From the IMG/VR virus record IMGVR_UViG_3300049793_000366, positions 62,001 through 126,000 of that record: a DNA stretch of 64,000 bases; one strand, written 5' to 3'. The notes below the pieces were generated by a model. The model was given only the letters and a program-made list of their open reading frames with translations. It was not told where the DNA came from and searched no databases. Within the stretch, counting starts at the first letter, position 1, and each line of letters opens with the position of its first letter. Both the position numbers and the translations under genes were made by a program. Positions 4,201 to 60,492 of this stretch are shown here, piece after piece.

Positions 4201-4996
4201 TAAAATATGGCACTAAAGATAAACCTTCGTAAAAGTTTAAAATGTTTACATTTCTATCATTGATAAAGTTAAGAACTTGGTCTTTCTTAAGACCAGATGT
4301 ATTAAAGTAGTTACCCCATCTTGAGTCAACTGATAATACAGCGTAGTTTGACCAATCACCTGATACAACAATAATGTCAACCATATAATCAGAAACTAAG
4401 TCATTGGCATATACATACGATGGTATTTTATCGGCAGAACCATAGTAGTCTAACATTGTTTGATTGTACCCTGTAATCTTAGATTTAACTGCGAATACAG
4501 TAATAGTCTTATCAGACATATTAGTAAACTGCATTACTCTTTGACTTGCGTTTGGATTGTTTTTAACAATATTTAAAAACGATTCTGTGTCTTTTGTCCA
4601 GAAACCAGTTGTGTCGAAGAATCTTCTATAAGCACCTGTTTTAACAGTATCGTTTAAATACTGTGTAGAAGTTGACAATGACTTATACTCTAATAAGTCT
4701 AAAGTGTCATCAGTTGCCAATAGATTCATAGCCCATACTGGACTAGATTCTAACATCTTAGTTACTGTTCTGTGGAAGTAAGAACCTTTCTTCTCCATAT
4801 TTCTGTCAATAGGACCAAAAATCTTTTCAAGGTCATTAACATTGTTTAGTAACACTGGATTATTAACAGGACCTTTTCTTGAAAAACCAATAACCATAGT
4901 AGTCAAACCTTGTACGATTGGGGTCTGAATTGCTGAGTTATCGAATTCTTCTATAAAGATTCCAGGTCTTTTGTATTTACCAATTTGAACTGCCAT
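1205..4996 (-). CDS. gp18: Contractile tail sheath protein with a large central insertion
   Basis: N-terminus RPGIFIEEFD...GFSRKGPVNNP; C-terminal sheath motifs PPASFVA, WTIAAG, FIHVREVLIELEK, IDEENNT, YVEP. Confidence 0.92.
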   Translation of the reverse strand: MAVQIGKYKRPGIFIEEFDNSAIQTPIVQGLTTMVIGFSRKGPVNNPVLLNNVNDLEKIFGPIDRNMEKKGSYFHRTVTKMLESSPVWAMNLLATDDTLDLLEYKSLSTSTQYLNDTVKTGAYRRFFDTTGFWTKDTESFLNIVKNNPNASQRVMQFTNMSDKTITVFAVKSKITGYNQTMLDYYGSADKIPSYVYANDLVSDYMVDIIVVSGDWSNYAVLSVDSRWGNYFNTSGLKKDQVLNFINDRNVNILNFYEGLSLVPYFRDKNGRNIFVETVVNRDTDKTGLFCAFNAEALETDSPNGLIDIVGNNLISNDDITDIEFLSYKDSIIEAVTYNNTYLDRAGNVSAIDGTASQLRGLTGSTIRSAYFAEGYVDGVTLATFSYATASATITYGAAANAYTVIGGVQINVAGTGSFTIDPTSYIGITASTLTYSTTYVLDTTGTIGKYENTTSSSNVAVGTTDIVLGHVVFGIKTVAGINQIQNAVYTDYTVNGSGYVELALGSDYTVTVATGGDVTVEMLATNAVASTANYGQYRRFKFFNHLINLLDSPNKSKMTMVVDGNEKRSLATMTLSNVVTASTANKKFTLATGLSSTILTDVANGVLGFYTIDDELIFAEYGMSTKNTAAVLTGTSSDGIVAKYSSLYKNYNDGIIESGDYFYENILAEPFDVSFVTATGQGYVVFYNTNNLASFPTFTTNQKVLFPDSVSNTGTLTVIDPNNFAAAIGYSPAANYRAFKVNESVTTESLTDVSTMWNALVKHFIKAYLDGSNNLKVAFTDSLLSSAEPITDVALNTTVVVKSQKSNYRQGVEIEVPTGYVQSPNKILVNGSRYTEVKVGDYLEAYIAPENDPSDVDYDSANGIPKRLTRITSKKLYAADTTLVEITCDARIKTYDFNGDLQTNRITAVDDYVTTYKAIALKGFKIRQDSMPDGTEERQNRILNLVAKGTNLFKALTDKEAISFRYLTDSFGLGLTELSKQQLADVCGARLDVFGFLNMPSMRSFKNSTSPTFVNTEGVLQTSYIALGGDPESSPAFLYSFAEGAGVSTVGYFAPYVIINDNGRPTEFPPASFVATTYMRKINSNQTNVTPWTIAAGVTNGVVTGIGALEMNFNSEDIENLNGMHANPIVSKKNRGFVIETENTAQTLLRSALSFIHVREVLIELEKEIAAMLLNYQWKYNTPDVRAEIKLKADAICERFVNRNGLFNFFNKIDEENNTSEIIDNQFGVLDTYVEPIKGMGVIVNNVTVLRTGAIQSGGFLNP

Positions 4997-5640: not shown

Positions 5641-7392
5641 TTATTGCTTGTTTTTACTGATATTATCCTTTAATAGTTTAATAATTTTTTGTGACCTAAT
5701 AGCTTCTTCGCCAGTAGAATCCTCAAGGGCAATCTCAGCCCATTTTATAGCTTGAACATATCCTCTATCAGCTCCATTTTCAATTAGCCATTGAACTAAA
5801 TCAAGGAATCCATTTTCAGCCGCAAATTTTAGTGGCATACCTTCTTTAGAGTTGATGTCAACACCTTTCTCTACTAAATATTTAATAAGTGGTAAGTTAC
5901 CTGTTCTACAAGCCGCTCTAATAGCATAAGAATCTTCGAAGTTAGGGTCAACACCATATTCTTCTACAATATACTTAACAGCATCGAAGTCACCTGATAA
6001 TGATTTAAATGCTTCCTTATTCATATTAGCACCATGTTTAAGTAATAACTTTAACATATCAAATGTTTTAACCAATGATACTGCTGTTTTATTTTTCTCA
6101 TAAGGGATATCCGGATTAGCACCATTATCCAATAAGAATTCAGCAACTTCTAAATTATTCGATTTAACAGCATTTCTAAGTGGTTTACCAGCTTCGATGT
6201 TAATATTAGCACCTTCCGCTAAACACTCTTTAATTCTATCAAGTGATGGAAGCTTTTCAGCTTTTAATTCTCTTGATGCTCTGTTATATTTTTCTTTTTG
6301 GTCTTTTTCTTCATTCGTCATTGCTCTTACAGCCGCATTCTCTTCTTCATCTAATCTTTTTCTAACTTGTCCTTCATCGATATAAGAGTCATTCTTAGTA
6401 TGTGCAGTGTCAAAAGTACCTTTCATATTAACTGTACAACCAATGATAGACTTTAAATCTGTTGGTGGTAAAGCATAGTCAAAAATAGCATACTGCTTTG
6501 TAAATTTATTCTCGTTACCAACGTATTGGTCCCAATGTCCTTGCGTTCTTGCGATACACCAGTTTGTTTGAGCGCATAATAATCGACAAGCATCAAATGA
6601 TTTTAATTCAACGATAACTCGTTCTTTTTCTTCATTCATAAATGCGATTGTAGCACCCCACTTTTCACCATATTTAGCATTAACATCTTCAACCTTCTTC
6701 AATAGTTCAGTCAAACCATCATTAGTACAAGCCTTAACGTATTGCTCCATCCTTTTAGTAGCCTCATCTGCTGTCTTAATAGCTGAAATCTTTTTGAAGA
6801 ATTCTTTTCTAAGAATTGGATCCAAATCGAATAGACCAATAGCAGCACCATCAAATCTTTCTTTTAATTTACCAGTGATACGCAAAACGTCATGTTTTAA
6901 CTCAGATGGTAACTCATCAATAATCTTTTTTACCTTACGGTAGTTTTTAATACGTTCGATATCATCGACTAAATCTTCATAAGCTGTTCTATCTTCAAGA
7001 CCATATCTCTTTTCAGATTCTAAATATTTATCAACTTGTTTAGGAAGCTTGTTTAAGCTATCTCGATTTTCAAGTAATGTATTATACAATGCTGTTAAAT
7101 CATCCATTGATACTTTATCTCTAAAAAAGAATCTTGTGAATACCTCAGTATAACCTGGGTTTCTTTCAACAAGTTTTTTAATTTTTAAGAAGTCAGGATC
7201 ATTTTCAGCCTTTCTAATTTCGTCTGGTGTTAATTTAGCTTGAACTGGTGCTTCTCCCTCTTTAGGTTCAACAGGAGTTTCACCCTCTGTTTTAGAAGCT
7301 AAATATGTATCACGCATGAATTTTTTAGCATTCTGTACGTTTTCATTGACAGTTTCTTTGTTTATAAAGTCGTTGTATTTACGCAAATTCAT
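5641..7392 (-). CDS. Ankyrin-repeat protein with N-terminal domain and capsid-targeting-like leader
   Basis: C-terminal ankyrin-like repeats (PLRNAVKSNNLEVAEFLLDNGANPD, AIRAACRTGNLPLIKYLVEKGVDIN, PLKFAAENGFLDLVQWLIENGAD); N-terminus MNLRKYNDFINKETVNE; central TNWCIA..W..Y motif. Confidence 0.85.
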   Translation of the reverse strand: MNLRKYNDFINKETVNENVQNAKKFMRDTYLASKTEGETPVEPKEGEAPVQAKLTPDEIRKAENDPDFLKIKKLVERNPGYTEVFTRFFFRDKVSMDDLTALYNTLLENRDSLNKLPKQVDKYLESEKRYGLEDRTAYEDLVDDIERIKNYRKVKKIIDELPSELKHDVLRITGKLKERFDGAAIGLFDLDPILRKEFFKKISAIKTADEATKRMEQYVKACTNDGLTELLKKVEDVNAKYGEKWGATIAFMNEEKERVIVELKSFDACRLLCAQTNWCIARTQGHWDQYVGNENKFTKQYAIFDYALPPTDLKSIIGCTVNMKGTFDTAHTKNDSYIDEGQVRKRLDEEENAAVRAMTNEEKDQKEKYNRASRELKAEKLPSLDRIKECLAEGANINIEAGKPLRNAVKSNNLEVAEFLLDNGANPDIPYEKNKTAVSLVKTFDMLKLLLKHGANMNKEAFKSLSGDFDAVKYIVEEYGVDPNFEDSYAIRAACRTGNLPLIKYLVEKGVDINSKEGMPLKFAAENGFLDLVQWLIENGADRGYVQAIKWAEIALEDSTGEEAIRSQKIIKLLKDNISKNKQ

Positions 7393-11269: not shown

Positions 11270-12256
11270 ATGAAAGAATTTATTGAGAAAATAAATGAGC
11301 AAATTGTAGAAGCAGTTGATATTGCGAATACTTCTAATTTTAAGAAATATTCAAAGATATCAGAGGTTTTGATTTGTGGTGTGGGTGGCTCTGGTATCTC
11401 AGGTACTATCGTAGCAAATATATTCAAAGACGAATGTAAAGTTCCTATATTCGTGAATAAGTCGTATAATATACCAAAATGGGTCAATAAGAACACGTTG
11501 ACAATTATATCATCATATTCAGGTACAACAGAAGAAACGGTTTCTTGTCTTAACCAAGCACTAAAAGCTAATACACAGATATTGTGCATAGCTACTGGTG
11601 GAACTGTTATAGAAGAAGCTAAGGATAAGAACCTCGACTATATTATTATACCATCTGGTTATCAACCAAGAGCGGCTTTAATTTATTCACTGATTCAAAT
11701 AATTAACGTATTGAGTAGTCAGGGATTTATTTCTGATAAAACAAACGAAATTAAAAACGCATCTGAGATACTTAAGTCAGAATCATGTGATGCTGTTGAA
11801 TACGCCAGACATATCGCTAAATTTATGGTGGGTTCAATTCCTATTATATACTCCGATGATATCTACGAAGGTATTGCAATAAGATTCAGGCAACAGTTGA
11901 ATGAGAATGCTAAGATGATTGCTTTCTCTTCAACATTACCAGAAATGAACCATAACGAATTAGTGGCTTTATTTGGACAATCATCCAATAGTAAAAACTA
12001 TCGTTGTATCTTCATAAATACTGGTCACGACCATGTAGAAATGCGTAAGAGATACGACTTCTTAAAGATAACTCTTGATAAGAGAGGTATACAGTGGTTG
12101 GATATCATCACACAAGGAAATACACCTCTCGAAAAAGCTTTATATACAATCCATTTAGCTGATTGGATATCTTATTACCTTTCTATTGAGAACGATGTAG
12201 ATCCGTTTGATGTTGGTATCATTGGTGCCTTAAAAGACTTCATTAAGCGCGATTAA
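11270..12256 (+). CDS. Bifunctional phosphoglucose/phosphomannose isomerase (double SIS domain)
   Basis: ICGVGGSGISG, SYSGTTEET, GYQPRAA, RFRQQLNENAK and LPEMNHNE motifs of the PGI/PMI family. Confidence 0.88.
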   Translation: MKEFIEKINEQIVEAVDIANTSNFKKYSKISEVLICGVGGSGISGTIVANIFKDECKVPIFVNKSYNIPKWVNKNTLTIISSYSGTTEETVSCLNQALKANTQILCIATGGTVIEEAKDKNLDYIIIPSGYQPRAALIYSLIQIINVLSSQGFISDKTNEIKNASEILKSESCDAVEYARHIAKFMVGSIPIIYSDDIYEGIAIRFRQQLNENAKMIAFSSTLPEMNHNELVALFGQSSNSKNYRCIFINTGHDHVEMRKRYDFLKITLDKRGIQWLDIITQGNTPLEKALYTIHLADWISYYLSIENDVDPFDVGIIGALKDFIKRD

Positions 12257-14424
12257 AGTCTCTTTCCAAAAATATCGATATTATTACCTCTCTGTTGATT
12301 CTTATATTGGTTCATAAACTTTCTGTTTCTATTAACAGATAACATAGCACCATAATCAGTTCCTTCGCTATAATCAACATTCTTTAATTTCTCATTGATG
12401 AATGTTGCTAATTCTTTTGGTATACCTCTGGTAACCATCTGTTCACATAAATCTTTGAAGAATATTTTCTTGAATACTGTCGCGGCACTAACTAATGTCA
12501 TAACAGTATCATCATTACCAGTATCAGCTTGATATCTAACGTTACCAGCAGTTGTTATAGTCTTAATAAAGGTCGTAATCTCATGTATATTCTCAGCATT
12601 ATTAACCTGTATATCACCTCTTTGCATAGCATCTTGGTAATCTTTAATTAATAGATTTTTATTATCATTGATTTTAAGACCTATCTTCTCTTCAGTAGCA
12701 TCCGCGCGATGTTTATATCTAACGAATACACCAGAGCCATAATCATTATTACCATCAAATACCTGTGGCATATGTGCTAATAATTCAGAGCCATATGTAT
12801 TTAATTCTAATACAATCTTAACCTTGTCACCATTGAAATATTCAAAGGCAATTAAATAAAGTAACTCAGCTAATTGCTTAACTGATACAATATTGGATCT
12901 AAATAATCCAATTTGAGTCAATGTAAAGAAATCAGCAGTATTATTATACGTGTGATGTTGTAACTCTATTTTCTCCTTAGACTTAGGCATGAGTCGGAAT
13001 ATATTTAAAATAGAGTAATCCTGACCCAATCCCTCTGCTATATCTACCGATATAACAACATCATATGTTTTCCTTGCAATTGGCGCGAATAGATTAGGGT
13101 CGTCAATCCATTTCAAGTTTTGATATGACCATCTTAATTTTCTATCAAACTCATGTATTTGTTCAAATACATACTCTTTTTTACTCTTAAGTAACTCATC
13201 TATTATTTTCTCATCAAATAATGATTTAGATGCGTTTACGAAACGTAAGTCGTACTCTTGATTGAAAGCCTCTTCACCACCAATATCTTTGATGGCTTCT
13301 TCTTTCCATGATGTAACCTCACATAATTCAACGATAGGTACTTCGAGACCTAATCTATTAATAAACGTAATAGCTCTAACATCATCAGTAGAACATCTAT
13401 CACTGTTTTGTATGTGTATAACATCTTTATTTGTATTGTAGTCAAACTGTTCTGTTATTTGGTCAATTGCTAAACCACCCCAATCAAAGGTGTCTCGTAA
13501 TCTTGCTACGATATCATCCTTAGATATACCGTGTTCGTGTAATAGACCTTCATCAATACGTAGATATGTAACGAATCGATTTGGTACTTGCCACCAATAC
13601 ACACGCATGGCTTTATAGTTATTCTTAAGCTTATCACCTTCTGGTCTCTCAGCAGCTGCTAATAGCTTATAGAACATATTCATACCGTTAGGTGTTGATG
13701 TAATAATAATCTTAGAGTTACTAATCGCAGAAACCGTTGGGAATGCGGCAGTATAGTATGGTTCAATAATATTAGATGGAATGTGAGCAAACTCATCCAT
13801 GTATAAGAAGTCAATAGTAAAACCGATTGCTGGTGTCTTAGAACGAGCAGATGTTTTGATACGACATCCATTTTCGAAAATAAGTGACTTTTGATTCCAG
13901 TTCTTAACACCCTTTTGTAAAAAGAATGGCATCAATCTATAAATTGATTTAATCTTATCAACAATCTCTACTGCTGTATCACCTTTATTGGCGATAATCA
14001 TCACGTTTTTATCATTATTGAATAGTACGAAGTGTAGAATAGCAATCGCGGCTGATACAGTCTTACCAACCTGACGAGATGCCATTAAGATACTGAATCT
14101 ATTTTTTGTATATAAATCTAATATATCTTTTTGGTAATCACGTAGCTTCATTTGACCTACGGTACCATCCTCTCGTTTAATCTTACAGTATTTCTCAGAG
14201 AAGTAATGAATATCAAGTTTGCATTTAATGTATTCTTGGATTTCATCCTCTGTCATTGAATATACGCAACCCGCTCGTCTAACACCTATCTCACCACTGA
14301 ACCATGGGTTCATGAATCTCTTTATAGCATAACCGTCATTAATCTTGGCTGTTACGTCTACTACATTCTCGGCATTAAATATAAATTGTTTATCTGGGGT
14401 TGGCTTTTTTGTTTTAGTAGCCAT
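12253..14424 (-). CDS. gp17: Terminase large subunit
   Basis: LRDYQ, ASRQVGKT Walker A, LYMDEFAH Walker B, IITSTPNG, FNQEY, nuclease motifs SVDIAEG and NDDTVM. Confidence 0.95.
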   Translation of the reverse strand: MATKTKKPTPDKQFIFNAENVVDVTAKINDGYAIKRFMNPWFSGEIGVRRAGCVYSMTEDEIQEYIKCKLDIHYFSEKYCKIKREDGTVGQMKLRDYQKDILDLYTKNRFSILMASRQVGKTVSAAIAILHFVLFNNDKNVMIIANKGDTAVEIVDKIKSIYRLMPFFLQKGVKNWNQKSLIFENGCRIKTSARSKTPAIGFTIDFLYMDEFAHIPSNIIEPYYTAAFPTVSAISNSKIIITSTPNGMNMFYKLLAAAERPEGDKLKNNYKAMRVYWWQVPNRFVTYLRIDEGLLHEHGISKDDIVARLRDTFDWGGLAIDQITEQFDYNTNKDVIHIQNSDRCSTDDVRAITFINRLGLEVPIVELCEVTSWKEEAIKDIGGEEAFNQEYDLRFVNASKSLFDEKIIDELLKSKKEYVFEQIHEFDRKLRWSYQNLKWIDDPNLFAPIARKTYDVVISVDIAEGLGQDYSILNIFRLMPKSKEKIELQHHTYNNTADFFTLTQIGLFRSNIVSVKQLAELLYLIAFEYFNGDKVKIVLELNTYGSELLAHMPQVFDGNNDYGSGVFVRYKHRADATEEKIGLKINDNKNLLIKDYQDAMQRGDIQVNNAENIHEITTFIKTITTAGNVRYQADTGNDDTVMTLVSAATVFKKIFFKDLCEQMVTRGIPKELATFINEKLKNVDYSEGTDYGAMLSVNRNRKFMNQYKNQQRGNNIDIFGKRL

Positions 14425-29591: not shown

Positions 29592-31331
29592 ATGGCCAGT
29601 TATAACCCACAGAACAATCCGCAAAATCAAGTTGTGACAGGGGGTGCCGCACAGAATCGCGGTGTTTTCAGTAGAATACTAAGAGATTTATCGTCGTGGG
29701 GAATGAATTATGATGACATGATTATCAAAAATTCATATGCTATTTCCATTAATGAAGATCCATATTCTCAAAAGGGATTTGGTATGTACGATTTCTTTTC
29801 ACAAAAGGCTATTGCCTCTATTATGGCTAAGAAGTCTATTCCTTATTTAGATAGAGCTTACCCAGATAAAAGAAGAATATTAAGAGAATATTCAATCAAA
29901 GATGAAGTACGAGATTTTGTTACTACAATAGCTGATGAGGTTATTATTTATGGTGATGATGGTCAGAAGTTTTGTAAGCCGAGGTCATTACCAGATGAAT
30001 ACTCTCAAGAAATTAAGAATAAATATCAAGAAGTATTTGAGAAGATATATTCTAAATATGGATTTAATGATGGTATATCTGCTTGGTACTATATAAAGGG
30101 ATTTCTTATTGATGGTTACTTAGCATTCGAAATCGTTTATGATGATAAATTCAAGAATATCATTCACTTTAACCAATTAGACCCAGCTACTCTAGTTCCG
30201 GGTTATGAACCAGCAACGGGTAAACATATTTGGATTCAATATCCAGAAGACCCACAGCTTAGAAAGATTCTATTAGACTCACAAGTTGTTTTCATATCAT
30301 ATTCAACACAAAAAGAATATTCTGAGACATCTTATGTTGAGGGATTAATTAGACCATATAATCAATTAAAAATCATAGAGCAAACAAGAATTATGTTCAA
30401 TATGTTGAACGCTATGATTTATCAGAAGTTTACAATTCCAATTACAGGTTTATCGCGTCAACGTGCAGAAGAGCAAATATCACAATTGATATCCGATTAT
30501 TCAGAAGAGGTTGAATGGGATGACTCATTAGGAACTGTTATGATTAATGGTTCGAAGCATTTACCATATAACAAACAATTGTGGTTCCCTGAGGGTGAAG
30601 GTGGGTCTCCTGCTTTTGAATTAGTATCACCAGAAGGACACAATCTAAATGAGTCTGATATGCTTACTTGGTTTTTTAATGCACTTAAGAGAGCAAGTAG
30701 AATTCCATTCTCACGATTTGATAAGGATAATGGTGGTGGTAATATATTCTCTGATGCATCTGAGATGACAAGAGATGAGGTGAAATTTTCAAACTTCATT
30801 AATAGATTAAGAACCGCTTATAGAGAGATACTTGTTAAGCCAATGAAACTTCAAATGATTATTGAATTTCCTGAGCTTATAAAGGATGAAATATTTCAAA
30901 ATGCTGTTGGTATCGAATTCAATTCAAATGATTTATTTGAAGAATGGAAGAAACTAAATAACCTACAGAAGAGAGCAGAGATTGTATCAAGTATGTTAGG
31001 TTCAATTCAAACAGCAGATGGTCAACCATATTTTCATGTTGACTATTTAGTAGATACAGTTTTAAAGTTGACTGAGGATGAAAAACAAGCTAACGCACGT
31101 TACAAACTTAAAGGTGGAGCAAATGCTACCGCTGGAGAAGGTGGCGCACCAGGCGGTGTAGGCGGAGCTGAACCAGGTGGACCTGATTTAGGTGGTGGTG
31201 GTGGAGCTGAACCAGGTGGTGACATCGGTGGCGCACCAGAAGAAGGTGGTGATGTAGGTGGTCCTGAACCGGGTGGTCCTGAACCAGGAGGTGATACAGA
31301 AGGTGCTGGTGGTGACGAATTTGAATTCTAA
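29592..31331 (+). CDS. gp20: Portal protein with Gly/Pro/Glu-rich C-terminal tail
   Basis: FLIDGYLAFE, LDPATL, SYVEGLIRPYNQLKIIE, WFP..EG, LKRASRIPFSRF, ITRDE-like MTRDEVKF; AATATATA at 29562-29569. Confidence 0.93.
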   Translation: MASYNPQNNPQNQVVTGGAAQNRGVFSRILRDLSSWGMNYDDMIIKNSYAISINEDPYSQKGFGMYDFFSQKAIASIMAKKSIPYLDRAYPDKRRILREYSIKDEVRDFVTTIADEVIIYGDDGQKFCKPRSLPDEYSQEIKNKYQEVFEKIYSKYGFNDGISAWYYIKGFLIDGYLAFEIVYDDKFKNIIHFNQLDPATLVPGYEPATGKHIWIQYPEDPQLRKILLDSQVVFISYSTQKEYSETSYVEGLIRPYNQLKIIEQTRIMFNMLNAMIYQKFTIPITGLSRQRAEEQISQLISDYSEEVEWDDSLGTVMINGSKHLPYNKQLWFPEGEGGSPAFELVSPEGHNLNESDMLTWFFNALKRASRIPFSRFDKDNGGGNIFSDASEMTRDEVKFSNFINRLRTAYREILVKPMKLQMIIEFPELIKDEIFQNAVGIEFNSNDLFEEWKKLNNLQKRAEIVSSMLGSIQTADGQPYFHVDYLVDTVLKLTEDEKQANARYKLKGGANATAGEGGAPGGVGGAEPGGPDLGGGGGAEPGGDIGGAPEEGGDVGGPEPGGPEPGGDTEGAGGDEFEF

Positions 31332-33749: not shown

Positions 33750-35426
33750 ATGTCACACATTAGAATAGACAAACAAAAAGCAATTAAGAAGTGGACACCT
33801 GTTCTTGAGAACATGGGAGTTAAAGATTCTGAAAGAATCGACTGGATGGCGGAATACGCTGAGTTCCACTCAATTAATGAAAATGCTTACGTTAATCAGC
33901 ATAACTTAGCTGGTTTAGGTAACGCTCTTTCTCCTCAACCTTCAAGCATCCCAGGTCAAACTATCGGTGCTTACACAACTAACGGTGGTGTAGTTGGTTC
34001 AGGTGATATCGGACAACAACTTTTACCAGTAGCGATGAAGATTGCTGCTCAAACTATCGGTCTTGACTTGGTAGCGGTAAAGCCAACTCCGGGTCCAAAA
34101 ATCGATTTATTATATGTAGATTTCGCATATGATGACACTCCAATGGGTGAAGGTCGTCCTCAAGTTTTCAAAGTAAACAACGCTTCTGCGGCTGCTATTG
34201 CTAACTTAAGAACCCTTATCACAATCGCTGGTGCGCGTGAAGTGCAAGGTGGATTAACTGGTGCTAAAATTTGGGTTTCTATCAACGCAACTGCGTCTGG
34301 TACTTTCTCTTACGGTGCAACAGAAAACTCTGCTCCTGCGAACAAAAAAGGATGGGTTGAATTCTTAGGTTTCTCTCGTATCGATGGTTATCCAATGTTA
34401 CGTGCTTACCGTCAGAACAACTACACAGGACAAAACAATTGGGCATATGACCAAACAGTAAATACATTCACTTCAACAGGTGATATCGCATCTCAAATCA
34501 CTATGATTTCTGGTGTAGCATTCTCTTCTGCTGCTGTAGAATTAATTTCTGCTCTTGAAGACCATATCCCAGGTTTCGTATCTAACTGGGCTGATAATAA
34601 CTTATCTCCAATGAACCGTAATGCTGATGAGAACTCTTATCCTGGTATTATTGCTCCAAGAGTATCAAGTAAATCAGTACAAGTTGGTACTATCGAAATT
34701 TCTTCTGCTTTAAAGCGTACAGAAATTGAAGATATCAAAGCTAACACAGGTATGGATATCGTTCAAAAGATGGAATCTATCCTTGTTAACGAATTATCTC
34801 AAACAATCTCTAAACAAATTGTTGCGAAGATTTTCGAAATGGGTGATTTAAACAGAGCTTCTGCTCCAACTTTAACTGCTACGGCTGGTATCGCGGACAG
34901 AACTATCTTCGACTTTGACGTTACAAGTTATTTAGCTACTAACGCACCAGGTGGAGAAACATCTCACGCAGTTCAACGTAAGTTAATCTCTAAGATTTTC
35001 AACGCAAGTAACTACTTAGCAACAGAAGGACGTATCGGGCCTGCACAGTTCGCTGTGACAAACGGTAACTTAGCTTCTGTATTAATGGATATCTCTGGAT
35101 ATACTATTAACCCAGCTAAGTCTAAGTTAAATACTGCTGGACAATTATACCCAGTTGGAACAATCGGTGATATCACTATCTACGTTGATCCATACATGAA
35201 GTATAACGACAACCGTATCGTTTTAGGACGTAAGAACAACCCTGACCAACCAGGTATCATCTTCGTTCCTTACTTGATGGCACAATCAATCAGCATCATC
35301 TCTGAAGCGACTTTCGCTCCAAGAATGTTACTAAGAAGCCGTTACGCGGTGACTGAAGTAGGTTGGTTCCCTCAAAAACAATATATGACACTTAAGGTGT
35401 ACGATGCAAATCAGAACCTTATCTAA
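33750..35426 (+). CDS. gp23: Major capsid protein
   Basis: W.PVLE start, AQTIGLDLVAVKP, ELSQTISKQI, GTIGDITIYVDPY, FVPY, TFAP...SRYAV; putative maturation site SINE/N. Confidence 0.93.
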   Translation: MSHIRIDKQKAIKKWTPVLENMGVKDSERIDWMAEYAEFHSINENAYVNQHNLAGLGNALSPQPSSIPGQTIGAYTTNGGVVGSGDIGQQLLPVAMKIAAQTIGLDLVAVKPTPGPKIDLLYVDFAYDDTPMGEGRPQVFKVNNASAAAIANLRTLITIAGAREVQGGLTGAKIWVSINATASGTFSYGATENSAPANKKGWVEFLGFSRIDGYPMLRAYRQNNYTGQNNWAYDQTVNTFTSTGDIASQITMISGVAFSSAAVELISALEDHIPGFVSNWADNNLSPMNRNADENSYPGIIAPRVSSKSVQVGTIEISSALKRTEIEDIKANTGMDIVQKMESILVNELSQTISKQIVAKIFEMGDLNRASAPTLTATAGIADRTIFDFDVTSYLATNAPGGETSHAVQRKLISKIFNASNYLATEGRIGPAQFAVTNGNLASVLMDISGYTINPAKSKLNTAGQLYPVGTIGDITIYVDPYMKYNDNRIVLGRKNNPDQPGIIFVPYLMAQSISIISEATFAPRMLLRSRYAVTEVGWFPQKQYMTLKVYDANQNLI

Positions 35427-56223: not shown

Positions 56224-57441
56224 ATGACCAAAATTCAAAAGTTTTTTCAGTTTAATGAAAGTGCGCTAGGCTCTACTTTTTGGAATTTAATTCCAGAGTC
56301 TATTAAGACTATTCATGCCGTTTTTCAAGCAAGTGGTTATAAGCTATTCTTGGTCGGCGGTGCTGTGCGAGATTTTATTCAAGATGATATTCCAAAAGAT
56401 TATGACTTAGCTACTGATGCTCACCCGAAAGAGGTCATGAGCCTATTGGATGGTTATGAACTTAACTTACAAGGTAAAGCATTTGGTGTGGTTGTGGTAT
56501 ATACCGAAGACCAACCTCTTGGTATGGAGATAGCTACATTCAGAAAGGATGTTTCTAAAGGTAGAAATCCTTTAGTTGAGCTTATTGGTGTTACAATAGA
56601 AGATGATGTTAGAAGACGTGATATCACATACAATGCGTTATTCTTCGATTTGGATAAAAAGGAGATTGTAGATTTAGTTGGTGGCGTTGAAGATTTGAAG
56701 AACAAAATCACAAGAATGGTTGGTGATGCGATTGAGCGATTAGATGAAGATTCATTGAGAATTCTTAGAGCGTTCAGATTCGCCGCGAGATATAACAGTG
56801 AACTTGATGCTGATTTAGTTTCAGCATTGAGAAGAAGAAACTGGTTGAAAAATATTAACCACGAGACTGGTAAGCTTGAAAGAATCTCACAAGAGAGAAT
56901 TTGGCAAGATGAAATTGTTAAAGCATGGAAACAAGCTAAGAACAACTATACCAAGTATTTAAAATTCTTCACTGAGTTTGATATGTGGCCAGAAGTATTT
57001 CCGGGTGCTGTAATAAACTCTGATATCGTTAAGTGTGAACACTTCGAGGTTTACATGGCTAACCTTTTCAGAAATATGGATGTGGATGTTGCTCACCCTC
57101 AGAAGTCAGAAGCAGTATTGGTAGCTAATTACAAAATTGATGGTAATACAGCCGCAGTGATTGTTTTCTTAGTTAGTTTGTTACAGTTAACACCACAGAA
57201 TGCTCTTAGATTGTATAGAACTAAGACAAGATGCGTTTCTATGGGCTTTGAAGATATAGACCCAATGATAATCGATTGGTTCAATGTTAACTCAATAACC
57301 GATTCGACACATTCTAAATTCATCAGTTACAGACCTACTGTTGATGTTGAGTTTTTAAAATCTCAGGGTTTTAAAGATAAAGCTCTTGGTGATGAAATTC
57401 AGCGATTAGAGGTGATAGAATTCACTAAGTTAATAAAGTAA
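56224..57441 (+). CDS. cca: Class II tRNA nucleotidyltransferase (CCA-adding / poly(A) polymerase family) without HD domain
   Basis: LVGGAVRD, PKDYDLAT, EIATFR, RRDITYNAL, GGVEDL, EDSLRILRAFRFAAR and ISQERI; leader MTKIQKFFQFNES. Confidence 0.9.
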   Translation: MTKIQKFFQFNESALGSTFWNLIPESIKTIHAVFQASGYKLFLVGGAVRDFIQDDIPKDYDLATDAHPKEVMSLLDGYELNLQGKAFGVVVVYTEDQPLGMEIATFRKDVSKGRNPLVELIGVTIEDDVRRRDITYNALFFDLDKKEIVDLVGGVEDLKNKITRMVGDAIERLDEDSLRILRAFRFAARYNSELDADLVSALRRRNWLKNINHETGKLERISQERIWQDEIVKAWKQAKNNYTKYLKFFTEFDMWPEVFPGAVINSDIVKCEHFEVYMANLFRNMDVDVAHPQKSEAVLVANYKIDGNTAAVIVFLVSLLQLTPQNALRLYRTKTRCVSMGFEDIDPMIIDWFNVNSITDSTHSKFISYRPTVDVEFLKSQGFKDKALGDEIQRLEVIEFTKLIK

Positions 57442-57466: not shown

Positions 57467-58210
57467 ATGGCAAGATTACAATACATAAAAGATGTTTTAG
57501 GAAATAACTATGTGGGTATAGATGTTTACGCAGAAGAGGTTGCTCCTTATTTACAAAAACTGAAAGATTACATAGATGATGATAAGCAATTTGAAATACT
57601 AACTGCTAATCAAAAGTTGCGTGACCACGATAAATGGCACATCACTGTAATTAATGTATTTGATTATAACGACTTAGCTAAGTCACTTGGAATGAAAAAC
57701 TTTCTTGAGAGGTTAGATAATATCTTCAAGATGGAAGTTAACGATATCGATTTTAAAGGTATCGGTAGAGCAGAAAGAAATGGTAATGAAGCTTACTTTG
57801 TTGTTTGTCAGTCTGACTTTTTGAATTCTATTCGAGATTCTTTCAAATTAAACCCAATTGACCTTCATTGTACACTTGGGTTTAATAGAAAGGATGTTCA
57901 TGGTGTGAGGAAGAATGAGATTTTGGAGAATAAACCAAAATTTTTAAAAACTATTTCCAATCTTTATCATAAAGATAAATCTCTATCATTTATAAACGAC
58001 ATTCAAAATTTAGGAATGAAGTTAGATAATATAGAGGTTTTATCCATTACTGATACAGTGTTAACTATTCGTTCAAACGATGTGTGTTATGGTATATCTT
58101 TAATAAACACTGGTGATGAAGACGTTCTACGTATTGTATCGCAGTACGCAGATAATGGGAGTAAATCAATCAATCAATATCAAATAGAGAAAATACTGGG
58201 TAAACTATGA
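57467..58210 (+). CDS. 2H phosphoesterase
   Basis: Two HxT motifs (WHITVI, LHCTLGF) about 75 aa apart; AATATATA at 57453-57460. Confidence 0.75.
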   Translation: MARLQYIKDVLGNNYVGIDVYAEEVAPYLQKLKDYIDDDKQFEILTANQKLRDHDKWHITVINVFDYNDLAKSLGMKNFLERLDNIFKMEVNDIDFKGIGRAERNGNEAYFVVCQSDFLNSIRDSFKLNPIDLHCTLGFNRKDVHGVRKNEILENKPKFLKTISNLYHKDKSLSFINDIQNLGMKLDNIEVLSITDTVLTIRSNDVCYGISLINTGDEDVLRIVSQYADNGSKSINQYQIEKILGKL

Positions 58211-58536
58211 CCAGAATAAAAATTAAGCGCACCACAATGACAGAGGTTTTAGGGTACTTTAACTTATCGGAATGTACCGACAGAAAAAAAGTAACAACGT
58301 ATCTCAATGATTTAGCTGATAATTGTAAGATTACTTGGCACCAAGAAGATTATGACACTATAAAGATAGTGGATCTTGATTTGGATGAAACAGAGATAGA
58401 GGACATTACTAAGTTCTTGAGCGATTACGATGTAATACAAGATATCATTCAAGAGGATAATGATGATGATTTTTATGATTCTCGTGGTGATTTCGATGAT
58501 GATTTCAGTGATTTTGGCTATGGTGACATGGTTTAG
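58207..58536 (+). CDS. Hypothetical protein with acidic C-terminus
   Basis: ATGA overlap with the 2H gene; D-rich tail. Confidence 0.55.
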   Translation: MTRIKIKRTTMTEVLGYFNLSECTDRKKVTTYLNDLADNCKITWHQEDYDTIKIVDLDLDETEIEDITKFLSDYDVIQDIIQEDNDDDFYDSRGDFDDDFSDFGYGDMV

Positions 58537-58693: not shown

Positions 58694-59314
58694 ATGGCAG
58701 GTATCTTCGACAAAGCAAAAAAGAACGCAGTTGTTAAAACAGCAGCAAAAGACGAAAAAACTCGTGTAACTATCGATAACCCAGAGTTCTTCGATAAAAT
58801 TGCTACTTTACAAGTACTTAACGAAAACATGAAACGTGATAAAGCGAAAGCTGACATGATTTCTGATGAAGTTAAAGAAATGGGTATCGAGAAGTGGGCT
58901 GACCTTTATACCGAAAAAGGTAAAAATCCTGAAACCATCATGCTTGAAGCACAAAACGCTACTGGTGACACTGCTCAAGCAATGTTCATGGTTACAGACA
59001 AATACATCAAAATTGACGAAGCTCGTGCTGAACAGTTGAAAGAATCTTATGGTGATGATATCGTTACCGAAGAAACTACTTTCGCTTTCGATGCTAAGAT
59101 GCTTGAGAAATATGCTGATATCATCAGCGAATTAATTGAAAATAGCGACAAAATTAAAGATGCCGACAAAGGCCAGTTAATTGTTGCTACAACCTCTTAC
59201 AACGTAGCAAAAGGTACTATCGACAAGCTTGATAAGTACGGAGAAGTTGCTACAATGGTTCAAGAAGTGAAACCAGTTGTAATGATGAAAAATGTAGAGG
59301 TTATCAACGGGTAA
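58694..59314 (+). CDS. Hypothetical early protein
   Basis: 206-aa Lys/Ala/Asp-rich ORF with strongly biased, high-expression-like codon use. Confidence 0.7.
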   Translation: MAGIFDKAKKNAVVKTAAKDEKTRVTIDNPEFFDKIATLQVLNENMKRDKAKADMISDEVKEMGIEKWADLYTEKGKNPETIMLEAQNATGDTAQAMFMVTDKYIKIDEARAEQLKESYGDDIVTEETTFAFDAKMLEKYADIISELIENSDKIKDADKGQLIVATTSYNVAKGTIDKLDKYGEVATMVQEVKPVVMMKNVEVING

Positions 59315-59445: not shown

Positions 59446-59511
59446 GGGGATTTAGCTCAGTGTTTAGAGCGTCTGTAAAGAAGGTCGGTGGTTCGATTCC
59501 ATCAATCTCCA
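59446..59511 (+). tRNA. tRNA-Ala-like RNA with a truncated anticodon arm (no anticodon)
   Basis: Acceptor GGGGATT/AATCTCC (G3:U70) with A73; D-stem GCTC/GAGC; T-arm GGTGG-TTCGATT-CCATC; variable AGGTC; anticodon arm only TCT-GTAA-AGA. Confidence 0.75.
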
Positions 59512-59513
59512 CA

Positions 59514-59624
59514 AGTGTTGTAGGGCATATTAGGTCAGTTAAAGCACTGACATAGGGGTAGAATGACAGTACTTCGTTTTACCAAACAAAAACTACAAGT
59601 GTTTACCCGACACTTGGCAACACT
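59514..59624 (+). ncRNA. Candidate multi-stem RNA between the two tRNAs
   Basis: AGTGTTG/CAACACT closing stem; hairpins GTCAGT/ACTGAC, GGTAGAA/TTTTACC and CAAGTGT/ACACTTG. Confidence 0.5.
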
Positions 59625-59629
59625 GACCC

Positions 59630-59701
59630 GGTTTGGTAGCTCAATGGCAGAGCGGCGGATTCTAAACCCGAAGGTTGTGGGTTCGAACCCCATCCGAACC
59701 A
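59630..59701 (+). tRNA. Amber suppressor tRNA (anticodon CUA)
   Basis: Acceptor GGTTTGG/CCGAACC with A73; D-arm GCTC-AATGGCA-GAGC; anticodon loop TT-CTA-AA (59660-59666) on CGG/CCG; T-arm GTGGG-TTCGAAC-CCCAT; no encoded CCA. Confidence 0.78.
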
Positions 59702-59702
59702 C

Positions 59703-59757
59703 ACTGCTTAGTTACATAGTGTGTTACAGATTCTCCTTTAGCAAGAGGATCAGCAGT
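59703..59757 (+). ncRNA. Small candidate structured RNA after the suppressor tRNA
   Basis: ACTGCT/AGCAGT closing stem stacked on a GATTCTC/GAGGATC hairpin. Confidence 0.35.
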
Positions 59758-59759
59758 AA

Positions 59760-59789
59760 AACCCGTTCTTCGAGCGGGTTTTCTTTTTT
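59760..59789 (+). terminator. Intrinsic terminator ending the RNA array
   Basis: AACCCGTT-CTTCG-AGCGGGTT followed by TTCTTTTTT. Confidence 0.85.
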
Positions 59790-60492
59790 ACAATAAATTG
59801 ATTTTGGATATTGGTCTATCACCGCTCTTGAATACACCCATTCCTATAATTACGGAAATAGTATCATCTTTCTCTTCGGTTTTTATTGCGCGACTTATAA
59901 CTACGTCTAAATCATTCTTATTTATGATTAGAACAGACTTCTCAGTCCAAGTGGGTACTACATAGCATTTTCTATTATTAATGAAGCCAGCCTCAGAGAA
60001 ACCCATATTCTTACTAAATAGTAGACTATTCTGCTTTTTGTAAATATCATTGAATGCAGGCATACTGAATAAAACTATTGAGTCAGCCTTTAGACATGAT
60101 TCTATACTCGACATTACGTATTCCTTAGACTTAGTTTTCTTTGAGAAAAGTCTCTTGAAGAAATTCTTTGCCTTATAAAACTTGATGTATTCTATTACAT
60201 TAGCATTTGATGATAAATAATTTAGAATGTGACTATGAATGTGACTCTTAGCTAAATTAGCAGCTATTGGTGTTAAGTCAATATCATTTTTATTATGTTG
60301 GATATCAATATTATGTTCATCCAAAACACAGTCTATAAGTACCGTATCAGTTTCGATTAGGTCGCCTTTGTTGACGGTTGTTTGCTTTTGATACTTACCT
60401 TTATTTCTATCGATGTAGAAAATATTTACAATATCGCTAACGTTAGATGCATTCATAGCACCTGATAAAATCTCGTGTTTATCTATGTTCAT
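59788..60492 (-). CDS. Hypothetical protein
   Basis: 234-aa ORF converging on the terminator. Confidence 0.55.
   Translation of the reverse strand: MNIDKHEILSGAMNASNVSDIVNIFYIDRNKGKYQKQTTVNKGDLIETDTVLIDCVLDEHNIDIQHNKNDIDLTPIAANLAKSHIHSHILNYLSSNANVIEYIKFYKAKNFFKRLFSKKTKSKEYVMSSIESCLKADSIVLFSMPAFNDIYKKQNSLLFSKNMGFSEAGFINNRKCYVVPTWTEKSVLIINKNDLDVVISRAIKTEEKDDTISVIIGMGVFKSGDRPISKINLL

What the first reader, a model, noticed from the sequence alone, without database searches (positions are those of the whole stretch)
59630..59701. Amber suppressor tRNA in a phage region that uses the standard code
Seen: in the only register that pairs the anticodon stem (C28-G42, G29-C41, G30-C40) and gives U33, A37 and a 5-nt variable loop, the anticodon is CTA (59662-59664). 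Pairs 27:43 (G-A) and 31:39 (A-C) are mismatched. All long ORFs here are open under code 11. Known: CUA tRNAs accompany TAG-to-Gln recoding in some gut phages (Lak, some crAss-like), which use in-frame TAG in late genes. Inference: a suppressor without visible recoding, which could be a precursor or relic of recoding, a timed read-through switch, or a way to disrupt host termination. The amino acid is uncertain (A73, short variable arm).
Basis: partly seen in the sequence, partly recalled or inferred. Interest (0 to 1): 0.75.

Follow-up and report, generated by a model that had tools for sequence, protein, structure and literature searches.

The report
Conserved amber-decoding tRNA, standard-code megaphage
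A huge soil phage that reads TAG as a normal stop nevertheless keeps a well-formed, evolutionarily conserved tRNA that should read TAG as an amino acid; such tRNAs are already known in other standard-code phages, so this is a good new example, not a new kind of thing.

Summary
Window 59630-59701 (+) is a tRNA (Rfam 62.4 bits; ARAGORN anticodon CTA at 59662-59664) with non-standard 27:43 and 31:39 pairs. The window lies in a 507,910-bp IMG/VR phage record, cut from a 711,805-bp contig. It is related to the 634-735 kb huge phages.

I found no TAG recoding in the 508 kb held. Sheath, terminase, portal and capsid genes are open and end in TAA. In-frame TAG is not enriched, and 13% of genes stop at TAG. 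No release-factor domain was found.

Orthologues at the same locus in five other lineages keep CUA and an A/C opposition at 31:39, while their stems co-vary. One lineage has only a truncated copy; more distant relatives have none, or a tRNA(CAU). So this is a selected but dispensable UAG decoder, not a relic.

It ends an operon with a CCA-adding enzyme and a 2H phosphoesterase. The inserted amino acid and the biological role remain unknown.

CUA tRNAs also occur in at least seven other jumbo phages with unbroken terminase and portal genes, and in cultured standard-code phages, so novelty is modest.

By-products: an anticodon-less alanine-type tRNA-like gene, a conserved structured spacer, and a conserved hairpin whose loop displays UAG.

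The parts
59630..59701 (+). tRNA with anticodon CUA (59662-59664). Acceptor GGTTTGG/CCGAACC, discriminator A73 at 59701. Anticodon stem has three Watson-Crick pairs flanked by G27.A43 and A31.C39. Loop is UUCUAAA. No CCA is encoded.
   Evidence: ARAGORN; Rfam 62.4 bits with alignment; covariation over 11 related CUA tRNAs: 95.7% of cells paired, 38 compensatory cells.
59702..59756 (+). Conserved 3' trailer. Hairpin 59729-59751 has a 7-bp co-varying stem (GATTCTC/GAGGATC) and an invariant 9-nt loop CTTTAGCAA (59736-59744). The loop holds TAG at 59739-59741; its UUUAG is the complement of anticodon-loop nt 34-38, CUAAA.
   Evidence: Alignments A4 and A6. The same loop occurs with different stems in L013, L010, L061 and L063. 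The 11-mer CCTTTAGCAAG is unique in the 508-kb record.
59758..59790 (+). Intrinsic terminator that closes the unit: an 11-pair stem followed by a T run.
   Evidence: Terminator scan; stem co-varies among relatives.
59446..59511 (+). Anticodon-less tRNA-like gene, 66 nt. Normal acceptor, D and T arms; G3:U70 plus A73 (the alanine identity set). The anticodon arm is replaced by a 3-bp stem capped by GTAA.
   Evidence: Rfam 53.3 bits, missed by ARAGORN. Present in L013 (4-bp stem plus GTAA) and L009. Its own covariance model scores 93.7 bits here; the next best hit is the phage's tRNA-Ala(UGC) at 64 bits.
59512..59629 (+). Conserved structured spacer between the two tRNA-type genes: an outer 9-bp helix enclosing three hairpins.
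   Evidence: RNAalifold on three relatives: -30.3 kcal/mol, 32 pairs, 3 with compensatory changes. No Rfam family at E<=1.
56224..57441 (+). CCA-adding tRNA nucleotidyltransferase, same strand, upstream.
   Evidence: Pfam PolyA_pol head 8.8e-28; PHROG 2244 7.8e-54; NCBIfam CCA/PcnB models.
57467..58210 (+). 2H phosphoesterase (2H-SAK family), an RNA-end healing type of enzyme.
   Evidence: Pfam PF22547 1.2e-17. Syntenic in all relatives.
58207..58536 (+). Conserved small ORF (about 100-109 aa) of unknown function; ends in TAG.
   Evidence: ORF list; synteny; no family match; stop codon.
58694..59314 (+). Conserved 206-aa protein of unknown function, immediately upstream of the RNA genes. It was the marker used to find orthologous loci.
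   Evidence: 1,384 homologues. No Pfam, PHROG or NCBIfam match. AF2 model pLDDT 84 with no informative fold match.
33750..35426 (+). Gp23-type major capsid protein, one of the late genes used to test for recoding. The others are sheath 1205-4996 (-), terminase 12253-14424 (-) and portal 29592-31331 (+). All are unbroken and end in TAA.
   Evidence: Pfam; stop codons; no stops inside the domain matches.

Best explanation
It is a functional phage tRNA gene whose anticodon CUA pairs with UAG. It is kept by selection in one subclade of huge (0.5-0.7 Mb), probably Bacteroidota-infecting, standard-code phages. Shown: the gene, its cloverleaf, the conserved anticodon, the lack of recoding and the operon context. 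Inferred: it is transcribed with, or just after, an operon for a CCA-adding enzyme and a 2H phosphoesterase, and ends at an intrinsic terminator. It is then cut out of a structured precursor and receives CCA post-transcriptionally, like nearly all tRNAs of this phage. It is charged by a host or phage synthetase; lysine or glutamine are the best guesses from A73 plus U35. It competes with host RF1 at UAG. Because the phage still ends 13% of its genes in TAG and has no in-frame TAG, suppression is probably partial or confined to part of the infection. It would act on ordinary stop codons (short C-terminal extensions of host and phage proteins, or rescue of amber mutations), not on recoded genes. 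The conserved unpaired 31:39 position is probably a tuning feature of the decoder. The biological payoff is not established.
For: The tRNA is real and of ordinary quality. Orthologues at the same locus, downstream of the same 206-aa gene, keep CUA in L013 (86% protein identity), L010/11/12 (76%), L061/62 (82%) and L063 (83%). Their acceptor and anticodon stems change by compensatory substitutions. The 31:39 opposition stays A.C or C.A in all five full-length orthologues. Among phage CUA tRNAs in general, 31:39 is unpaired in 10 of 30, against 9 of 125 sense tRNAs from the same DNA. Standard code: ORF coverage is 73.6% under code 11, 77.2% with TAG as sense and 75.9% with TGA as sense. Only 2 TAG sites have coding potential on both sides, against 8 for TGA and 23 for TAA. 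The one long TAG-joined pair is a complete adenylate kinase followed by a separate gene. Stop use is TAA 513, TGA 111, TAG 94. Sheath, terminase, portal and capsid are unbroken. No RF-1 domain was found. CCA dependence: 64 of 66 phage tRNAs have C after the discriminator and only one encodes CCA; the CCA-adding enzyme lies 2.2 kb upstream on the same strand. Possible charging enzymes in the phage are GlnRS, a LysRS-like protein and a short TrpRS-like protein. From general knowledge (recalled, not tested here): in E. coli, amber suppressors built on A73 bodies tend to be charged with lysine and those on G73 bodies with glutamine.
Against: There is no expression, aminoacylation or suppression data; the only run that holds the sequence is soil DNA. 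The gene is dispensable: it is truncated in L009 and absent in L014, L015/16 and L004. No CUA tRNA was found in the 634-kb genome by a full ARAGORN scan, nor in the 634-, 642- and 735-kb genomes by a restricted pattern search. TAG stops are more frequent here (13.1%) than in the suppressor-less 634-kb relative (8.1%), and TAG stops have no nearer back-up stops than TAA stops. An efficient suppressor might be expected to leave such marks. The anticodon stem has only three Watson-Crick pairs in this copy. The acceptor stem (G1-C72, U3-A70, A73) fits neither the glutamine nor the tryptophan pattern of this phage's own tRNAs. The first 204 kb of the 711,805-bp source contig could not be read.
Confidence: 0.6

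Rival explanations
1. It is a stepping stone to, or a leftover from, TAG-to-amino-acid recoding of the kind used by Lak phages, which belong to the same large clade. On this view the tRNA has no present job beyond making in-frame TAG tolerable.
For: The 206-aa marker protein has its only GenBank phage matches in records of 634,780, 642,428 and 735,411 bp. Those lengths match the largest genomes of the Mahaphage clade, which also contains the TAG-recoded Lak phages and is predicted to infect Bacteroidetes (PMC7162821). Borges et al. propose that low-GC phages first lose a stop codon and then acquire a suppressor, and they report a standard-code phage with a TGA suppressor (10.1101/2021.08.26.457843). 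The phage encodes GlnRS and four tRNA-Gln genes.
Against: TAG is not depleted: 13.1% of stops here against 8.1% in the suppressor-less relative. There is not one convincing in-frame TAG in 508 kb. The acceptor stem and discriminator are unlike tRNA-Gln. CUA has been kept through enough divergence for stems to co-vary, which argues for a present function. No RF2 gene is present.
Confidence: 0.15
2. It does not serve translation. Together with the neighbouring anticodon-less tRNA-like RNA it acts as a substrate, decoy or regulator for tRNA-directed enzymes, for example host anticodon nucleases or the phage's own RNA-repair proteins.
For: It sits about 200 kb from the phage's main tRNA arrays. 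It ends an operon for a CCA-adding enzyme and a 2H phosphoesterase. It lies next to a tRNA-like gene that cannot decode anything. A conserved hairpin complementary to its anticodon loop follows it.
Against: The anticodon triplet itself and U33/A37 are invariant, and the body keeps all elements needed for the ribosome and EF-Tu. A decoy would not need a precise CUA. The tRNA occurs without the tRNA-like neighbour in L010, L061 and L063. Nearly all tRNAs of this phage need CCA addition, so the neighbourhood is not specific to this one.
Confidence: 0.15
3. It decodes more than, or something other than, UAG. The shortened anticodon stem may relax wobble so that UAA is also read through C:A pairing, or C34 may be modified, as in tRNA-Ile2, which would change its partner.
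For: Short anticodon stems allow near-cognate stop reading, and an old E. coli screen linked 4-bp stems in suppressors to UAA read-through (PMC13092985). This copy has only three standard pairs. 27:43 and 31:39 are unpaired more often in phage CUA tRNAs than in sense tRNAs. A tRNA(CAU) occupies the same slot in a distant relative, and tRNA-Ile(UAU) and tRNA(CAU) are among the nearest sense tRNAs.
Against: 71% of the phage's genes end in TAA, so reading UAA would be costly. The top pair, 27:43, is restored in L013, L010 and L061. Only the bottom pair is consistently open, and the cited work did not study that case. Body similarity does not single out one isotype.
Confidence: 0.07
4. It is a decaying or chance tRNA-like sequence without function.
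For: Two mismatches in the anticodon stem. A truncated copy in L009 and absence in several relatives.
Against: 62.4 bits, mid-range for this phage. Five diverged orthologues have an intact cloverleaf, an invariant anticodon loop core and compensatory stem changes. The 31:39 mismatch is itself conserved as A.C or C.A.
Confidence: 0.03

Closest known systems
Suppressor tRNA(CUA) of TAG-recoded (code 15) phages: Lak megaphages, crAss-like phages, Phass-1
   Same: Phage-encoded tRNA with anticodon CUA, U33, A37 and A38. The Phass-1 Sup-CTA tRNA was picked up by BLAST with this tRNA. This phage is related to the largest Mahaphage-clade genomes, the clade that contains Lak.
   Different: There are no in-frame TAG codons in 508 kb, including late structural genes. 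There is no RF2. TAG ends 13% of genes. The acceptor is G1-C72/A73, not the U1-A72/G73 glutamine type seen in Phass-1.
Sup-CTA tRNAs annotated in phages not known to be recoded (e.g. Aeromonas phage Akh-2, Demerecviridae) and the suppressor-bearing standard-code phages noted by Borges et al.
   Same: An amber-type tRNA in a phage with no sign of TAG recoding. In IMG/VR, 13 other records that carry a CUA tRNA have an unbroken terminase ORF, and 7 jumbo-phage records also have an unbroken T4-type portal.
   Different: The Akh-2 tRNA sits inside a tRNA array and has G3:U70, the alanine type. This one is solitary, ends an RNA-repair/CCA operon, has an open 31:39 pair and carries a conserved trailer hairpin. 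I did not test the code of Akh-2 myself.
tRNAs with shortened anticodon stems that read stop codons (Blastocrithidia-type tRNA-Trp; bacterial 4-bp-stem tRNAs, PMC13092985)
   Same: Fewer than five anticodon-stem pairs in a tRNA associated with stop-codon reading.
   Different: Those tRNAs keep a sense anticodon and are opened at the top of the stem. Here the anticodon is already cognate to UAG, and the consistently open pair is the bottom one, 31:39.
tRNA-associated theta (minimal HDV-like) ribozymes of gut phages (PMC10879173)
   Same: A phage suppressor tRNA without encoded CCA, followed by a conserved structured 3' element, in a genome with a CCA-adding enzyme. That enzyme is 250-fold enriched in theta-ribozyme phages.
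   Different: No HDV-like family matches even at E<=1. The trailer does not begin with G, and I could not draw the nested P1/P2 fold. The conserved element is a simple hairpin plus terminator.

Membership tests
tRNA (Rfam RF00005) | Cloverleaf with 7/4/5/5-bp stems and a score above the curated threshold | tested here: met
   62.4 bits against a gathering score of 29, full-length match. 95.7% of cells paired over 11 related sequences, against 78% in shuffles.
tRNA (Rfam RF00005) | Conserved tertiary nucleotides: U8, A14, G18G19, G53-T54-T55-C56, A58, C61 | tested here: met
   All can be read directly in 59630-59701.
Amber suppressor tRNA | Anticodon CUA in a 7-nt loop with U33 and purine 37 | tested here: met
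   Loop UUCUAAA. Invariant CUA in five orthologues.
Amber suppressor tRNA | Aminoacylated, and inserts an amino acid at UAG in vivo | not testable with these tools
   Only a soil DNA run holds the sequence.
Code-15 (TAG to Gln) phage recoding system | In-frame TAG codons in conserved genes, especially late genes | tested here: not met
   Caveat: 204 kb of the source contig was not seen.
Code-15 (TAG to Gln) phage recoding system | TAG rare or absent as a terminator | tested here: not met
   94 of 718 called genes end in TAG.
Code-15 (TAG to Gln) phage recoding system | Glutamine-type suppressor (U1-A72, G73), often with phage RF2 | tested here: not met
   G1-C72 and A73, whereas all four phage tRNA-Gln genes start with U1. 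No RF-1 domain in the record.
tRNA-Pyl (ARAGORN's label) | Small D loop without G18G19, 6-bp anticodon stem, 3-nt variable loop, atypical T loop | tested here: not met
   G18G19, a TTCGAA T loop, a 5-nt variable loop and a short anticodon stem are present. ARAGORN gives this label to any CUA tRNA. pyl genes were not searched for.
tRNA plus theta ribozyme unit | HDV-like double-pseudoknot ribozyme with its cleavage site at the tRNA 3' end | tested here: inconclusive
   No HDV-like Rfam match at E<=1, and no such fold seen by eye in the trailer. The published RNArobo descriptor was not available to run.
Short-anticodon-stem stop-reading tRNAs | Stem opened at the top (27:43) with a 7-nt loop | tested here: inconclusive
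   G27.A43 in this copy, but paired in L013, L010 and L061. The conserved opening is at 31:39.

The most novel reading that the evidence does not exclude
The locus is a dedicated phage module for manipulating termination, not for recoding. On this reading the amber decoder's activity is set by a deliberately open 31:39 pair. Its own transcript carries a UAG-displaying hairpin that pairs with the anticodon loop (CUAAA:UUUAG). That hairpin would either mask the tRNA until it is processed or sense free suppressor just before the terminator, in a T-box-like way. An anticodon-less, alanine-type tRNA-like RNA made from the same transcript would be a second non-decoding player.
Probability: 0.1. Interest if true: 0.75.

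Novelty: new member of a known kind. Interest (0 to 1): 0.45.

Why it matters
Why phages that use the standard code keep suppressor tRNAs is an open question. The only published proposal is that the tRNA is a step towards recoding.

This case gives a clean test object:
- The amber decoder has been kept through substantial divergence in one of the largest phage lineages known.
- TAG is not depleted as a stop, and no recoded gene was found, which argues against the simple stepping-stone idea.
- The conserved open 31:39 pair and the UAG-loop hairpin are concrete features that can be mutated in a reporter assay.

If the tRNA is active, it would also be a natural, probably orthogonal-looking amber suppressor. 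No close counterpart of its body was found in 185,579 bacterial and archaeal species genomes.

Tried and rejected
1. Hidden TAG recoding. I tested this by ORF coverage under four stop sets, TAG-joined ORF pairs, coding potential on both sides of every stop, extensions after TAG stops, and a frame-independent coding scan of the gene-poor last 50 kb. No signal appeared. The best candidate, record 296,582-297,619, is a complete adenylate kinase followed by a separate gene.

2. Theta/HDV-like ribozyme after the tRNA. This was attractive because of the CCA-adding enzyme and 2H phosphoesterase upstream. No Rfam match was found and no fitting fold could be drawn.

3. Function of the 206-aa neighbour. 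There are no family hits. The AF2 model is confident (pLDDT 84), but there is no significant PDB match, and the AlphaFold DB hits are mostly uncharacterised proteins (the one name given looks like an automatic label), with TM below about 0.5.

4. Isotype by similarity. The nearest sense tRNAs are Lys(UUU), Ile(UAU) and Met(CAU) in these phages, and Trp, Val or Thr in GenBank phages. This is not decisive.

5. Bacterial source of the tRNA. Two pattern scans of 185,579 species genomes gave nothing, apart from one unrelated odd tRNA.

6. Exact-pattern searches for close copies in IMG/VR found nothing for either RNA.

7. Reading the trimmed 204 kb of the source contig or the 709-kb relative. Those records are not held.

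8. Kissing hairpin as a general feature of phage CUA tRNAs. It occurs only at this orthologous locus, and 8% of sense tRNAs have a chance complement of their own loop downstream. The duplex energy alone is weak, -1.8 kcal/mol.

Full report
**1. The observation**

ARAGORN finds a single tRNA in the window, at 59630-59702 (+), with anticodon cta at position 33, which is 59662-59664. Rfam's tRNA model matches 59630-59701 end to end at 62.4 bits, against a gathering score of 29. It flags two non-standard pairs, the outermost and innermost pairs of the anticodon stem: G27.A43 and A31.C39.

U33, A37, A38, a 5-nt variable loop, A73 and the usual tertiary nucleotides can be read from the sequence. No CCA is encoded.

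**2. Where the window lies**

- The window is bases 62,001-126,000 of a 507,910-bp IMG/VR virus record, with CheckV completeness 97%.
- The record has GC 33%, 61 ARAGORN tRNAs plus a tmRNA, 68 Rfam tRNA matches all on one strand, and no 16S rRNA.
- The same DNA lies at about position 324,588 of a 711,805-bp JGI contig. The IMG/VR 'provirus' is therefore the last 508 kb of that contig. I could not reach the first 204 kb.
- The only sequencing run that holds the sequence is a soil metagenome.
- A 206-aa protein next to the tRNA has 1,384 homologues, on contigs of up to 709 kb.
- Its only matches among GenBank phages are records of 634,780, 642,428 and 735,411 bp. These lengths match the largest genomes of the Mahaphage clade of Al-Shayeb et al. 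That clade also contains the TAG-recoded Lak phages and is predicted to infect Bacteroidetes (PMC7162821).
- The window itself encodes a tail sheath, a T4-type large terminase, a T4-type portal and a Gp23-type capsid protein.

**3. Is the code standard?**

- Coverage by ORFs of at least 150 aa is 73.6% under code 11, 77.2% if TAG is sense and 75.9% if TGA is sense. This is no specific gain for TAG.
- Only one pair of ORFs of at least 100 aa is joined by a TAG. It is a full-length adenylate kinase followed by an unrelated ORF.
- Sites with coding potential on both sides number 2 for TAG, 8 for TGA and 23 for TAA. That is what adjacent same-frame genes give.
- In 718 simple gene calls the stops are TAA 513, TGA 111 and TAG 94. 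Read-through extensions after TAG have a median of 6 codons, no shorter than after TAA.
- The gene-poor last 50 kb shows no pattern of in-frame TAG.
- Sheath, terminase, portal and capsid are unbroken and end in TAA.
- No RF-1 domain is present.

Within the 508 kb held, the phage uses TAG as a stop.

**4. Is the tRNA under selection?**

I used the 206-aa protein as a marker to fetch orthologous loci.

| Locus | Protein identity to window | What lies downstream of the 206-aa gene |
|---|---|---|
| L013 | 86% | CUA tRNA (also the tRNA-like gene) |
| L061/L062 | 82% | CUA tRNA |
| L063 | 83% | CUA tRNA |
| L010/L011/L012 | 76% | CUA tRNA |
| L009 (709-kb contig) | 82% | Only the 5' half of the CUA tRNA, anticodon loop included, fused to the terminator |
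| L014 | 70% | No tRNA |
| L015/L016 | 57% | No tRNA |
| L004 | 48% (CCA-adding enzyme) | No tRNA |
| L017/L018 | 59% | Leu, Arg and Met tRNAs |
| LR745206.1 (634 kb) | 54% | tRNA(CAU) |

- Among the full-length orthologues the acceptor stems differ (GGTTTGG, GGTCTGT, GGTCTAA) with matching changes on the other strand.
- On an alignment of 11 related phage CUA tRNAs, 95.7% of cells are paired, against 78% in shuffles. There are 38 compensatory cells, against 11.
- The one position that is consistently not paired is 31:39. It is A.C in the window and L013, and C.A in L010, L061 and L063.
- Among 30 distinct phage CUA tRNAs gathered with a pattern that does not constrain 31 or 39, 10 have 31:39 unpaired. 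The figure is 9 of 125 for sense tRNAs from the same DNA (Fisher p=5e-4). The sequences are not independent, so this is only indicative.
- LR745206.1 has 59 tRNAs and no suppressor. A restricted pattern search found no CUA tRNA in LR745206.1, LR756502.1 or LR756501.1.

The gene is therefore a maintained but accessory trait of one subclade. Its anticodon is never 'sense' in the orthologues.

**5. Context and maturation**

On the same strand upstream lie, in order:
- an N6 DNA methyltransferase;
- a CCA-adding enzyme (56224-57441);
- a 2H-SAK phosphoesterase (57467-58210);
- a small conserved ORF;
- the 206-aa protein.

The RNA genes follow, then an intrinsic terminator at 59758-59790. A convergent gene lies beyond it.

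Of 66 phage tRNAs, 64 have C after the discriminator, 49 have CA, and only one encodes CCA. CCA addition is thus a general need of this phage's tRNAs, and the CUA tRNA follows the same pattern.

The tRNA lies about 200 kb from the main tRNA arrays.

**6. Which amino acid?**

This remains unresolved.

- G3:U70 and a long variable arm are both absent. That argues against alanine, and against serine, leucine or bacterial tyrosine.
- The phage's four tRNA-Gln genes all begin with U1. Its tRNA-Trp has A1-U72 and G73. The CUA tRNA has G1-C72 and A73.
- The nearest sense tRNAs are Lys(UUU), Ile(UAU) and the syntenic tRNA(CAU), at 70-78% identity. GenBank phage hits include Trp, Val and Thr.
- The phage encodes GlnRS, GluRS, a LysRS-like enzyme, AspRS, AsnRS, TyrRS, a short TrpRS-like protein and an AlaRS fragment.
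- From recalled E. coli work on synthetic amber suppressors (not tested here), A73 bodies with CUA tend to be charged with lysine and G73 bodies with glutamine. Lysine is my first guess and glutamine my second.
- Two pattern scans found no tRNA with this body in 185,579 bacterial and archaeal species genomes.

**7. What does it do?**

The mechanism I commit to is decoding of UAG in competition with RF1. The anticodon, U33, A36-A37-A38 and the whole body are kept as a translation-competent tRNA would be.

The purpose is open. The stepping-stone model expects TAG to be depleted. Here TAG is 13.1% of stops, against 8.1% in the suppressor-less 634-kb relative.

Because the phage tolerates 94 TAG-terminated genes without nearer back-up stops, I infer that suppression is partial or temporally limited.

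Short anticodon stems are linked in the literature to relaxed stop reading (PMC13092985). Cross-reading of UAA is therefore a live but minor alternative.

**8. How new is it?**

- Sup-CTA tRNAs are annotated in cultured Aeromonas T5-like phages.
- Borges et al. tabulated suppressor tRNAs by genetic code, including code 11, and describe a standard-code phage with a TGA suppressor.
- Among IMG/VR records carrying a similar CUA tRNA, all 13 with a terminase match have it unbroken. Seven jumbo-phage records (155-425 kb) also have an unbroken T4-type portal.

This is therefore a new, well-documented member of a known kind. Its value lies in the comparative evidence and the odd anatomy around it.

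**9. By-products**

- (a) Window 59446-59511 is a 66-nt tRNA-like gene that ARAGORN misses (Rfam 53.3 bits). It has G3:U70 and A73 and normal D and T arms. Its anticodon arm is reduced to a 3-bp stem capped by GUAA. It looks like the phage's tRNA-Ala(UGC) with the 7-nt loop removed. L013 has a 4-bp stem with the same GUAA loop and a compensatory acceptor change. L009 has G3-C70 instead.
- (b) The 118-nt spacer between the two genes is as conserved as the coding DNA and folds into a closed four-helix structure.
- (c) The trailer hairpin has an invariant loop CUUUAGCAA on co-varying stems in all five orthologues. Its UUUAG complements anticodon-loop nt 34-38. However, L013's tRNA has C38 without a matching loop change, and chance complements are not rare.

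Noticed in passing
window 59446-59511 (+); also L013 1286-1354 and L009 5738-5803: A tRNA-like gene that lacks an anticodon. It has G3:U70 and A73 (the alanine identity set) and normal D and T arms. Its anticodon arm is cut down to a 3-4 bp stem capped by a GUAA tetraloop. The closest sequence is the phage's own tRNA-Ala(UGC). It may be chargeable with alanine but cannot decode. It is conserved in three relatives, one of which has lost the G:U pair, and is absent from L010, L061 and L063.
   Followed up: partly
window 59729-59751 (+), loop 59736-59744: A hairpin between the CUA tRNA and the terminator. Its 9-nt loop CUUUAGCAA is invariant and its stems co-vary in five orthologues. The loop contains UAG and is complementary to anticodon-loop nt 34-38. 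The 11-mer is unique in the 508-kb record. It may be a cis mask or a sensor of the suppressor; chance is not excluded.
   Followed up: partly
window 59512-59629 (+): The spacer between the tRNA-like gene and the CUA tRNA is conserved in L013 and L009. It folds into an outer 9-bp helix enclosing three hairpins, with a few compensatory changes. It matches no Rfam family.
   Followed up: partly
whole record G000 (66 tRNA matches): Nearly all phage tRNA genes are followed by C, then A (64 of 66 have C74; 43 have CAA). Only one encodes CCA. This is a uniform 3' signature that implies dependence on a CCA-adding enzyme.
   Followed up: partly
G000:C1 388-425 kb and 14-15 kb (outside the window): A large set of phage aminoacyl-tRNA synthetase genes, several placed next to their cognate tRNA genes: GlnRS beside four tRNA-Gln genes and a LysRS-like enzyme beside a tRNA-Lys cluster. 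The set also includes GluRS, AspRS, AsnRS, TyrRS, a 240-aa TrpRS-like protein and a 240-aa AlaRS fragment.
   Followed up: partly
G000 as a whole; JGI contig Ga0497410_0000003: The IMG/VR 'provirus' of 508 kb is the right-hand part of a 711,805-bp contig, and a relative sits on a 709,085-bp contig. The true genome may be about 0.71 Mb, near the largest phage genomes reported. The provirus trimming is probably an artefact of bacterial-like genes.
   Followed up: no
G000:C1 460,000-507,910 (outside the window): The last 48 kb has very low long-ORF coverage in every code and weak coding signal. My calls give many short genes there (120 per 50 kb). It is not explained by TAG or TGA recoding.
   Followed up: partly
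G000:C1 320781-320837, 407620-407690, 431477-431549, 433277-433350, 412731-412807: Further Rfam tRNA matches that ARAGORN does not call, plus two ARAGORN calls with 2- or 4-base 'anticodons'. The phage carries several other non-standard tRNA-like genes.
   Followed up: no
window 5641-7392 (-): A 583-aa protein with ankyrin repeats lies between the tail sheath gene and other structural genes. This is unusual for a phage structural region.
   Followed up: no
L064 3066-3143 (-), Alphaproteobacteria MAG PFND01000022.1: A bacterial tRNA with an 8-nt anticodon loop (ARAGORN gives anticodon 'ctta'). Its body resembles the query pattern. It may be a frameshift-suppressor-type tRNA.
   Followed up: no
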